Translations under genes and position numbers: made by a program
Part shown: piece after piece, positions 18,037 to 18,421 of the stretch
Position numbering within the stretch: position 1 is the first letter of the stretch
How the letters are laid out: each line of letters begins with the position of its first letter
Notes under the pieces: model-generated
Told to the model about the DNA's origin: nothing
The model's database searches: none
What the model saw: only the letters and a program-made list of their open reading frames with translations
NCBI RefSeq assembly: GCF_001194135.2
Contig: NC_069009.1
Location: 6,129,592 to 6,162,381 of the forward strand
DNA: 32,790 nt
Direction: 5' to 3'
Origin: Octopus bimaculoides
Taxonomy: Eukaryota

Positions 18037-18421
18037 AAATAAAAGAACTGGACGCCATTGCATAGTGCCAAGGACTCCAAATTTGCCATCAAGATGTAGG
18101 GCAAGATACTGCAATAGTCTGGGCTTCATAGGTCCACAGCTCTTCAATATCCTCCCGAAGGACCTGAGAGACCTGCATGCGGTGGATGTAGGTGTCTTCA
18201 AGACAAGGCTGGACCTCTTCCTGTCAGGTGTCCCAGATGAACCAACTTCACGGCAGGAGGCGCAGATGAGAGCAGCTGCATCAAACTCTCTCATGCACCA
18301 AATGTCAATTCCTGAAGTAAAATTCGTGAAGTAAAATTGTGTAACAACACCAAATGGCGGTGCCCCAGCATGGCCACAGCTCATGAGCTGAAACTAGATA
18401 AAATGAAAATGAAAATGAAAA
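18037..18421 (+). mobile_element. 5'-truncated CR1/L2-group LINE: ORF2 C-terminus, 3' UTR and (TGAAAA)n tail
   Basis: Reads GRHCIVP..RYCNSLGFIGPQLFNILPKDLRDL..FKTRLDLFLSGVPDEP..RAAASNSL..* (stop at 18334). GP-LFN-LP and FK--LD-FL motifs are typical of the C-terminus of this group. No stop or frameshift in the retained part. Confidence 0.8.

What the first reader, a model, noticed from the sequence alone, without database searches (positions are those of the whole stretch)
18355..18421. LINE 3' end and type B SINE share a tail with a compensatorily conserved stem-loop
Seen: just after the CR1/L2-group ORF2 stop, the LINE reads GGCGGTGCCCCAGCATGGCCACAG, matching the SINE tail GGCGGTGCTCCAGCATGGCCACAG (29831-29854) at 23 of 24 nt. 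The LINE then forms CAGCT-[CATG]-AGCTG (18377-18390), while the SINEs form CAGTC-[AAAT/AAAA/TAAT/ATAT]-GACTG (e.g. 5156-5169). Both are 5-bp stems with 4-nt loops, with two paired double substitutions, and the SINE loop varies while the stem is largely kept. Each ends in a different short tandem repeat: (TGAAAA)n versus (TAAAAGAG)n. Known: stringent-type LINEs such as eel UnaL2 recognise a 3' stem-loop plus terminal repeats, and SINEs borrow these tails. Inference: this identifies the LINE clade that mobilises the dominant SINE here. The mismatch suggests the actual partner is a sister subfamily of this copy.
Basis: partly seen in the sequence, partly recalled or inferred. Interest (0 to 1): 0.7.

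Follow-up and report, generated by a model that had tools for sequence, protein, structure and literature searches.

The report
Octopus LINE and SINE share tail
A truncated CR1-like LINE in this (apparently octopus) window ends in a conserved two-hairpin RNA tail plus short repeats that the genome's dominant SINE also carries. A rarer sister LINE in the same genome has the SINE's exact version, which makes this an ordinary but clear new example of SINEs borrowing a LINE's recognition tail.

Summary
Window 18356-18427 is the true 3' end of a 5'-truncated LINE, here called LINE-A. More than 50 other copies in the genome end in the same sequence, so it is not an adjacent SINE. The SINE tails match it as described.

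The 24-nt "box" is itself a hairpin (H1).

I compared eight lineages: five LINE families in this genome, two LINE relatives from other octopods, and the SINE. Ninety-four of 95 pair positions stay paired. Three pairs show compensatory double changes, one pair shows a G·U change, and the H2 loops share no base.

It exists: LINE-S has about 69% ORF2 amino-acid identity to LINE-A, and its box (24/24) and H2 stem are identical to the SINE's. It is about 30-fold rarer than LINE-A. No LINE-A subfamily carries the SINE stem, and no SINE subfamily carries the LINE-A stem.

Two cautions apply. "Loop varies, stem kept" within SINE copies is not evidence, because both mutate at about 3%. Mobilisation itself is inferred, not shown. 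The finding is a new member of a known kind.

The parts
18022..18334 (+). 5'-truncated LINE-A copy: C-terminal ORF2 coding remnant (open frame 18035-18334, stop TAA 18332-18334)
   Evidence: Frame listed. Other genomic copies match only from about 18022 onward and extend further 5' to different points. A consensus of longer copies gives one ORF with Exo_endo_phos_2 and RVT_1 domains.
18335..18355 (+). Short family-specific 3' UTR spacer between the stop codon and the tail module
   Evidence: Conserved within LINE-A copies. Unrelated to the equivalent stretch in LINE-S, B, C, D and E and to the SINE body.
18356..18375 (+).
   Evidence: It is the MFE structure of each tail RNA folded alone and the RNAalifold consensus. 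Pair 3-18 covaries C-G to U-A. The invariant G5·U16 wobble exists only on the sense strand.
18377..18390 (+). Hairpin 2: CAGCU-CAUG-AGCUG, a 5-bp stem with a 4-nt loop
   Evidence: 100% of cells paired across eight lineages. Pairs 4 and 5 each show a compensatory C-G to U-A change and pair 2 shows A-U to G·U. The loops share no base.
18391..18399 (+). Invariant AAAC (18391-18394) followed by a family-specific spacer TAGAT
   Evidence: CTGAAAC is invariant in all eight lineages.
18400..18427 (+). Terminal (AAAATG)n repeat of LINE-A; the element ends here
   Evidence: TRF reports 4.7 copies. Repeat number and A-run length vary between copies.
29506..29897 (+). Near-full-length young SINE copy lacking about 12 nt at its 5' end. 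It has a tRNA-like head, an internal (TA/TG)n run and a 3' half. In its tail H1 is 29831-29850, H2 is 29852-29865, AAAC is 29866-29869 and (TAAAAGAG)n starts at 29872.
   Evidence: About 97% identical to the SINE consensus.
5135..5183 (+). Tail of the SINE copy at 4818-5183
8049..8092 (+). Tail-only (extremely 5'-truncated) copy with the SINE/LINE-S type stem, starting at the first base of hairpin 1
   Evidence: The sequence upstream is the head of an inverted SINE, not a SINE 3' body.
8273..8316 (+). Decayed tail of a second SINE subfamily that has ACCCTTCAA inserted just before the box
13584..13634 (+). SINE tail; the SINE body is lost in an assembly gap
14772..14827 (-). Tail of an older SINE copy (14772-15165, ACCCTTCAA subfamily)
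26088..26147 (-). Tail of a young SINE copy (26088-26653)
32514..32566 (+). Tail of an older SINE copy (32157-32570) with (TAAAAGAA)-type repeats

Best explanation
Window 18356-18427 is the 3'-terminal recognition and priming module of an octopod-specific group of CR1-like LINEs with an APE endonuclease and RT in ORF2. In the sense-strand RNA it forms two adjacent hairpins. H1 is GGY.GGUGC-NCCA-GCAUG.RCC. H2 is CRGNN-N4-NNCUG. They are followed by an invariant AAAC, a short spacer and family-specific terminal repeats.

By analogy with stringent-type LINEs, the element's own ORF2 protein would bind this structure. It would then start target-primed reverse transcription on the terminal repeats, whose number varies between copies as expected from slippage.

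The tRNA-derived SINE that dominates this genome carries the same module and is mobilised in trans by this LINE group. The window's abundant, young family (LINE-A) is a relative of the SINE's tail donor, not the donor. The SINE's H1 and H2 stem are identical to those of the low-copy sister family LINE-S, whose repeat (TAAAAGAA)n also occurs on older SINE copies.

Shown: the tail is intrinsic to the LINE, the module is shared, the two hairpins covary, LINE-S exists, and the copy numbers and ages are as reported. Inferred: protein binding, priming on the repeats, and which family actually drives the SINE.
For: **The tail is intrinsic to the LINE.**
- More than 50 copies with varied 5' truncation share it.
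- The LINE consensus encodes Exo_endo_phos_2 and RVT_1 in one ORF.

**Structure.**
- Every sense-strand tail RNA folds alone into the same two hairpins, with ensemble frequency 0.74-0.97. Four of five have z-scores of -2.1 to -3.7; the G+C-rich L062 tail scores -0.8. The antisense strand does not fold this way, z = +0.24.
- RNAalifold returns the same structure.
- 98.9% of 95 cells are paired. Three pairs have changes on both sides and one has A-U to G·U. No shuffle of 500 reaches the observed covariation score, and slid controls give 21-40% paired.
- The four families with usable ORF2 sequence form one clade with 100/99 support and 62-77% amino-acid identity. A 51%-identical homologue outside the clade lacks the tail.

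**Partner LINE.**
- LINE-S has an ORF2 end (...SNSILHQKPLRQRWKVER*) followed 9 nt later by GGCGGTGCTCCAGCATGGCCACAGTC-ATTG-GACTGAAAC and (TAAAAGAA)n, seen in 19 copies.
- LINE-S copies have a median divergence of about 4-5%, overlapping the youngest SINE copies at about 3%.
- LINE-A 3' UTR joined to a CAGTC stem occurs once.
- SINE body joined to CAGCT occurs in about 4 of the first 100 listed hits, out of 162 CAGCY hits.

**Shared insertion signature.** A (TA)n run follows 46-51% of LINE-A, LINE-S and SINE ends, against 10% background.

**Precedents.** A CR1 3' hairpin plus 8-mer microsatellite is proposed as the RT recognition site (PMC8665684). Each zebrafish L2 ORF2 protein binds its own 3' stem-loop (PMC4176376).
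Against: - No experiment supports binding or mobilisation.
- The SINE's H2 loop (AAAU) matches no LINE loop found. LINE-S has AUUG. In zebrafish L2 the loop confers specificity (PMC4176376).
- The young SINE subfamily ends in (TAAAAGAG)n. That is the repeat of LINE-D and of the foreign LINE-B, not exactly that of LINE-S. The SINE tail therefore looks mosaic, and its true driver could be an unsampled or extinct lineage.
- LINE-S is rare: 12 exact 18-mer hits, against 396 for LINE-A and 15,599 for the SINE.
- The covariation rests on eight lineages and about three or four events. Three rows are single genomic copies.
- The G·U pair in LINE-D rests on about half of 31 decayed copies at a CpG site.
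- The LINE clade (CR1 versus others) was not tested against reference elements.
Confidence: 0.62

Rival explanations
1. LINE-A itself, the family of the window copy, mobilises the SINE. Its ORF2 protein would read only the shape of the two hairpins and the invariant bases, so the two swapped stem pairs and the different repeat would not matter.
For: H1 differs from the SINE's only at one loop base, and the architecture and AAAC are identical. LINE-A is young (about 3%) and about 30 times more abundant than LINE-S. Its (TA)n junction signature matches the SINE's. No loop base is conserved among families, so loop-specific recognition is not evident.
Against: Four stem bases, three of the four loop bases, the spacer and the terminal repeat unit all differ. 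Despite thousands of SINE copies, a SINE body with the LINE-A stem is essentially absent, and no LINE-A subfamily has the SINE stem. Related stringent LINEs discriminate cognate from non-cognate tails (PMC4176376).
Confidence: 0.2
2. The shared tail is a historical relic. The SINE took its tail from, and was mainly amplified by, a lineage not sampled here or now extinct, with an AAAU loop and (TAAAAGAG)n repeats. LINE-S, LINE-A and LINE-D would be cousins of that driver.
For: The SINE tail is mosaic relative to known families: the box and stem match LINE-S, and the repeat matches LINE-D and LINE-B. SINE copies range from 77% to 97% identity to their consensus, so much of the amplification predates the LINE-S copies sampled. 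LINE-S is rare.
Against: Two pattern scans found no LINE other than LINE-S and LINE-E with a CAGTC stem. They required the ORF2-end motif and the tail to match exactly and allowed 60-118 nt between them. The youngest SINE copies (about 3%) are contemporaries of LINE-S and LINE-A.
Confidence: 0.15
3. The tail after the ORF2 stop is an adjacent SINE fragment or assembly chimera, and the stem-loop resemblance is chance.
For: Tail-only truncated copies do exist in the genome.
Against: More than 50 LINE-A copies have the same UTR-tail junction, with 396 exact junction 18-mers genome-wide. LINE relatives in Argonauta and in a foreign contig have the same layout. There are 0 chance matches in shuffles.
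Confidence: 0.01

Closest known systems
Eel UnaL2 LINE / UnaSINE1 pair (L2 clade, stringent type; Kajikawa & Okada 2002, from my own knowledge; summarised in PMC3747384)
   Same: A tRNA-derived SINE carries the 3' end of a LINE from the same genome. The tail holds a conserved stem-loop followed by short terminal repeats instead of poly(A).
   Different: The sequence is unrelated and the LINE group probably differs. Here there are two adjacent hairpins and no loop base conserved among families. Nothing has been tested experimentally.
Zebrafish ZfL2-1 / ZfL2-2 cognate tail recognition (PMC4176376)
   Same: Co-resident related LINE families have different 3' stem-loops. The precedent is that each ORF2 binds its own tail.
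   Different: In ZfL2 the stem is read generally and the loop specifically. Here the families differ at stem pairs 4-5, the loop and the repeat, and the SINE's loop matches no LINE. The rule therefore cannot simply be transferred.
Amniote CR1 3' structure: hairpin plus 8-bp microsatellite (Suh 2015, as cited in PMC8665684)
   Same: A hairpin sits immediately upstream of a short microsatellite at the 3' end of an EN+RT LINE without poly(A). LINE-S, LINE-D and the SINE use octamers (TAAAAGAA or TAAAAGAG). Family-specific repeat variants are proposed to let several families coexist.
   Different: The sequences differ. LINE-A uses a hexamer. A second hairpin (H1) is present. CR1 membership of the octopus LINEs was not tested by phylogeny.
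SINE/LINE tail pairs listed by Ohshima 2013 (PMC3747384, Table 1)
   Same: The phenomenon is the same. CR1 and RTE partners predominate in that table.
   Different: That table has no mollusc or octopus pair ('octopus' and 'mollus' each occur 0 times). A 2026 O. vulgaris annotation still lists 893 recently active SINE families as 'Unclassified SINE' (PMC13282606).

Membership tests
SINE/LINE pair sharing a 3' tail (stringent-type model) | The SINE 3' end is homologous to the 3' end of a LINE in the same genome | tested here: met
   The SINE tail matches LINE-A at 23/24 in the box and matches LINE-S at 24/24 in the box with an identical stem and AAAC. blastn aligns about 60 nt at 85-89% identity.
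SINE/LINE pair sharing a 3' tail (stringent-type model) | The tail is an intrinsic part of the LINE, directly downstream of ORF2, in many copies | tested here: met
SINE/LINE pair sharing a 3' tail (stringent-type model) | The SINE and its partner end in the same terminal repeat | tested here: inconclusive
   LINE-S has (TAAAAGAA)n. Older SINE copies have the same unit, but the young SINE subfamily has (TAAAAGAG)n, as LINE-D does.
SINE/LINE pair sharing a 3' tail (stringent-type model) | The LINE protein mobilises the SINE in trans through the tail | not testable with these tools
   This needs a retrotransposition assay.
Conserved structured 3' RNA element | Base pairs are kept through compensatory changes between independently evolving lineages | tested here: met
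   Three pairs have changes on both sides and one has a G·U change. 98.9% of cells are paired, and 0 of 500 shuffles reach the observed score. The sample is small: eight lineages.
CR1-clade LINE | APE-type endonuclease and reverse transcriptase in a single ORF2 | tested here: met
   The consensus ORF of 954 aa or more matches PF14529 and PF00078. The consensus still has two stops in the EN region.
CR1-clade LINE | 3' hairpin plus short microsatellite, no poly(A) | tested here: met
CR1-clade LINE | The RT groups with reference CR1 elements in a phylogeny | not tested
   No reference LINE sequences were available. Database neighbours carry only automatic 'jockey' names. The resemblance of the C-terminal motif (LYSLERRRERYAII...) to chicken CR1 is from memory only.
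L2-type tail (UnaL2/ZfL2) | A specific conserved loop nucleotide is needed for recognition | tested here: not met
   The H2 loops CAUG, AUUG, CUUG, GCAU, UGCG, GACUC, ACUU and AAAU share no position. This concerns conservation across families only.
tRNA-derived SINE | A 5' head derived from a tRNA with pol III A and B boxes | tested here: inconclusive
   ARAGORN calls no tRNA in the window. The consensus head GGCGCAGGAGTGGCTGTGTGGTAAG...GGTTCAGTCCC has a B-box-like GGTTCAGTCCC by eye.

The most novel reading that the evidence does not exclude
The tail may act as a small address code. An invariant scaffold (H1, the first three H2 pairs and AAAC) would be read by all ORF2 proteins of this octopod LINE group. 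H2 pairs 4-5, the loop and the terminal repeat unit would partition several co-resident families into private replication channels. Under this reading the genome's dominant SINE (on the order of 10^5 copies) rides the channel of a LINE family with only tens to hundreds of copies. That is a case of a SINE out-competing its own driver.
Probability: 0.3. Interest if true: 0.55.

Novelty: new member of a known kind. Interest (0 to 1): 0.42.

Why it matters
SINEs make up a large share of octopus genomes: about 4% in O. bimaculoides and 11.6% in a 2026 O. vulgaris annotation. They have been invoked in octopus genome reshuffling. Even so, the held literature names no LINE partner, and most recently active SINE families there are labelled 'unclassified'.

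Linking the dominant SINE to a defined LINE group through a 45-nt structured tail gives three things:
- a way to classify those SINEs;
- a candidate driver, LINE-S;
- a natural series of tail variants, with three compensatory pairs and different repeats, for testing how a CR1-like ORF2 protein chooses its template.

Tried and rejected
- **Adjacent-SINE or chimera explanation:** rejected.
- **Covariation within decayed SINE copies:** rejected as a test. Loop and stem mutate equally, at 3.2% and 3.6%, as expected for dead copies.
- **Rfam scan of 18250-18450:** no relevant family.
- **ARAGORN on the window:** no tRNA called.
- **A 51%-identical LINE homologue from an unknown animal (L084):** no such tail. 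L085's contig ends before the tail.
- **Metagenome scan for the tail pattern:** 0 hits.
- **Second protein search using LINE-S:** no further octopod relatives beyond P0001 and P0002.
- **L062 (LINE-B):** only 72-75% identical to anything in this genome, so it comes from another species.
- **Search for LINEs with a longer UTR and the SINE stem:** none found.
- **LINE-A UTR joined to the SINE stem:** 1 hit.
- **SINE body joined to a C at stem position 4:** 162 hits. Almost all are CAGCC, which fits a single T>C decay rather than a subfamily.
- **Fetching LINE-D and more SINE loci:** LINE-D is therefore known only from 80-nt pattern read-outs and one copy (L052).

Full report
**1. The observation**

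- An open frame at 18035-18334 ends with TAA at 18332-18334.
- Twenty-one nt later comes GGCGGTGCCCCAGCATGGCCACAG (18356-18379).
- This is followed by CAGCT-CATG-AGCTG (18377-18390), AAAC, TAGAT and (AAAATG)n up to 18427.
- The 24-mer with up to 3 mismatches occurs nine times in the window and never in 100 shuffles. Eight of the nine are SINE-type tails with CAGTC-N4-GACTG.

**2. The tail belongs to the LINE**

- The window's own genome is 2.34 Gb. From the repeats and the nearest relatives I infer it is an octopus; no species was given.
- It holds thousands of candidate matches to 17950-18430. The 30 best are 94-97% identical.
- These copies start at different points: some extend more than 1 kb further 5', others less. 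All end in the same UTR, box, stem-loop, AAAC and (AAAATG)n, with a variable repeat number. This is the pattern of a 5'-truncating LINE.
- Walking upstream gave 30 more loci. Their 3.5-kb consensus has one long frame of at least 954 aa with an APE-type endonuclease (PF14529) and a reverse transcriptase (PF00078).
- I call this family LINE-A. The window copy is a 406-bp 3' fragment at about 18022-18427.

**3. The SINE**

- Twenty further copies give a consensus of about 390 bp. It has a tRNA-like head (GGCGCAGGAGTGGCTGTGTGGTAAG...GGTTCAGTCCC), an internal (TA/TG)n run and a 3' half.
- The tail is GGCGGTGCTCCAGCATGGCCACAGTC-AAAT-GACTGAAAC-AAG-(TAAAAGAG)n.
- In an unselected sample from about 240 kb of held DNA, copies are 77-97% identical to this consensus, with a median of 88%. 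The family has therefore been active for a long time, and its youngest copies are about 3% diverged.
- The SINE body/box junction 18-mer occurs 15,599 times exactly. Given that decay destroys most exact 18-mers, I infer a copy number on the order of 10^5.

**4. Relatives of the LINE**

- A protein search with the ORF2 C-terminal 426 aa found only two close relatives. P0001 is 77% identical and comes from a metagenome contig, L062. P0002 is 65% identical and comes from Argonauta hians, L061. All other hits are at most 51% identical.
- Both relatives have the same layout just after ORF2.
  - L062: GGCGGTGCCCCAGCATGGCCACAGCC-TGCG-GGCTGAAAC-AGAG-TAAAAGAG.
  - Argonauta: GGTGGTGCACCAGCATGACCACAGCC-GACTC-GGCTGAAAC-ATT-(TTAAAACA)n.
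- L062 is only 72-75% identical to anything in this genome, so it comes from another species.
- A 51%-identical homologue has no such tail.
- Mining the held DNA and using pattern scans of the genome uncovered more families in this genome.
  - LINE-D: GGTGGTGCTCCAGCATGACCAC[G/A]GCC-GCAT-GGCTGAAAC-GAG-(TAAAAGAG)n, 31 decayed copies.
  - LINE-E: stem CAGTC/GACTG with loop CTTG.
  - A tail-only copy resembling the Argonauta tail.

**5. The predicted partner**

- I scanned for the conserved ORF2-end codons (ATCRAACTC), then 60-90 nt, then the SINE-type stem. This gave 22 hits, about 14 of them from one family, LINE-S.
- Its ORF2 ends ...SNSILHQKPLRQRWKVER*. Nine nt later comes GGCGGTGCTCCAGCATGGCCACAGTC-ATTG-GACTGAAAC-ATA-(TAAAAGAA)n, consistent across 19 copies.
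- The box is 24/24 identical to the SINE's and the stem is identical. The loop (3 of 4 bases), the spacer and the last base of the repeat unit differ.
- Older SINE copies do carry (TAAAAGAA)n.
- LINE-S ORF2 is 69% identical to LINE-A. In a tree, A, S and L062 group together with Argonauta as sister, and the clade has 100/99 support.
- LINE-S copies are variably 5'-truncated, with a median divergence of about 4-5%. LINE-A is at about 3% in a sample biased towards young copies.
- Exact junction 18-mers: LINE-S 12, LINE-A 396.
- LINE-A 3' UTR joined to a CAGTC stem occurs once.
- SINE body joined to CAGCY occurs 162 times. Nearly all are CAGCC, which is a single T>C change, and about 4 of the first 100 are CAGCT.
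- A scan allowing a longer UTR found no further LINE with the SINE stem.
- The families therefore keep their tails apart. The SINE's tail is of the LINE-S type, not the LINE-A type.

**6. Structure**

- I aligned eight tails: consensus tails of LINE-A, LINE-S, LINE-D and the SINE, and single copies of LINE-E, L062, Argonauta and the tail-only element.
- RNAalifold predicts two hairpins, (((.((((....)))).))).(((((.....))))). The same fold is the minimum-energy structure of each sense RNA taken alone. Four of five have z-scores of -2.1 to -3.7 and L062 scores -0.8. The antisense strand of the window tail does not fold this way (z = +0.24).
- Counting the 12 pairs gives 98.9% of 95 cells paired. 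The single exception is in a decayed single copy.
- The changes are as follows.
  - H1 pair 3-18 is C-G in five lineages and U-A in three.
  - H2 pair 4 is C-G in five and U-A in three.
  - H2 pair 5 is U-A only in LINE-A.
  - H2 pair 2 is G·U in LINE-D.
- No shuffle of 500 reaches the observed covariation score or the observed percentage paired. Sliding the partners gives 21-40% paired.
- On the tree, the two H2 changes lie on different branches (A and S), departing from a CC/GG state shared by Argonauta and L062.
- The invariant G5·U16 wobble in H1 and the G·U in LINE-D exist only in the sense-strand RNA.
- Caveats: only eight lineages and about four events support this. The LINE-D G is seen in about half of 31 copies at a CpG site.

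**7. What is not evidence**

Among 39 SINE tails the loop mutates at 3.2% and the stem arms at 3.1-4.1%. The only recurrent loop variant is AAAA (4 of 39). The valid comparison is between families.

**8. Mechanism**

- Shown: a conserved, covarying two-hairpin module begins exactly at the first base of H1 in every family and in the SINE. It has unrelated sequence upstream and family-specific repeats downstream.
- Inferred from established work on stringent-type LINEs: ORF2 protein binds the structure and primes reverse transcription on the repeats, and the SINE is copied in trans. The supporting precedents are R2, UnaL2 and ZfL2 (PMC4176376, PMC3747384) and the CR1 hairpin plus microsatellite (PMC8665684).
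- A shared junction signature fits a common insertion machinery. A (TA)n run follows 46-51% of LINE-A, LINE-S and SINE ends, against 10% background.
- Which family drives the SINE is the weakest step. LINE-S fits best on box and stem, but the SINE's loop matches no LINE and its young repeat unit is that of LINE-D.

**9. Novelty**

- The principle is textbook.
- In the held literature I found no named LINE partner for octopus SINEs. The 2013 list of pairs has no mollusc entry. Recent octopus repeat papers do not address partners and leave most SINE families unclassified.
- Curated repeat libraries such as Repbase and Dfam could not be checked.
- I rate this a new member of a known kind, with modest interest. 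It is a clean comparative data set and gives a testable candidate driver for a very abundant SINE.

Noticed in passing
3' junctions of LINE-A, LINE-S and SINE copies (e.g. window 5184-5231 after the SINE at 5135; loci L017, L022, L070, L075): About half of all three element types are followed directly by a (TA)n run: 46-51% against 10% of random 45-nt windows. This suggests either a shared target preference for TA-rich sites or microsatellite birth at the junction.
   Followed up: partly
window 8049-8092 (+); L017 (-) about 1358; L012 (+) 1939: These tail-only copies begin at or within a few bases of the first base of hairpin 1. One lies inside a mariner-like ORF. They may be extreme 5' truncations, and they hint that the tail alone is a sufficient template.
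   Followed up: partly
window 8273 (+), 14772-15165 (-), about 7620-8012 (-): An older SINE subfamily has ACCCTTCAA inserted just upstream of the box and otherwise carries the same tail.
   Followed up: no
window 18942-19256 (-): An open frame ...YSPDLSPTDYHFFKHLDGFLQ... looks like the C-terminus of a mariner/Tc1-type transposase, about 500 bp downstream of the LINE fragment. It was not run against a family library.
   Followed up: no
window about 13060-13430 and about 15830-16730: Runs of N (assembly gaps) are present. One removes the body of the SINE whose tail is at 13584.
   Followed up: no
SINE consensus; window 29660-29700: The SINE carries an internal (TA)n/(TG)n microsatellite between its head and its 3' half. 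Its length varies between copies.
   Followed up: no
window 1059-2173 and 3477-4578: There are large tandem arrays with units of about 145-148 bp (2-3 copies) and 367 bp (3 copies, 97% matches). They are unrelated to the finding.
   Followed up: no
window 15274-15664, 17481-17661 and elsewhere: Long trinucleotide microsatellites, (CAT)n and (TAG)n/(TGG)n, flank the LINE fragment and give spurious long ORFs.
   Followed up: no
G000 matches (e.g. C9:23126890, C13:55058479): A different tRNA-like repeat (ATCGAACTCACGACC...CTAACCACTAAGCCAC, read in reverse orientation) lies next to SINE-type tails. It may be another SINE family in this genome.
   Followed up: no
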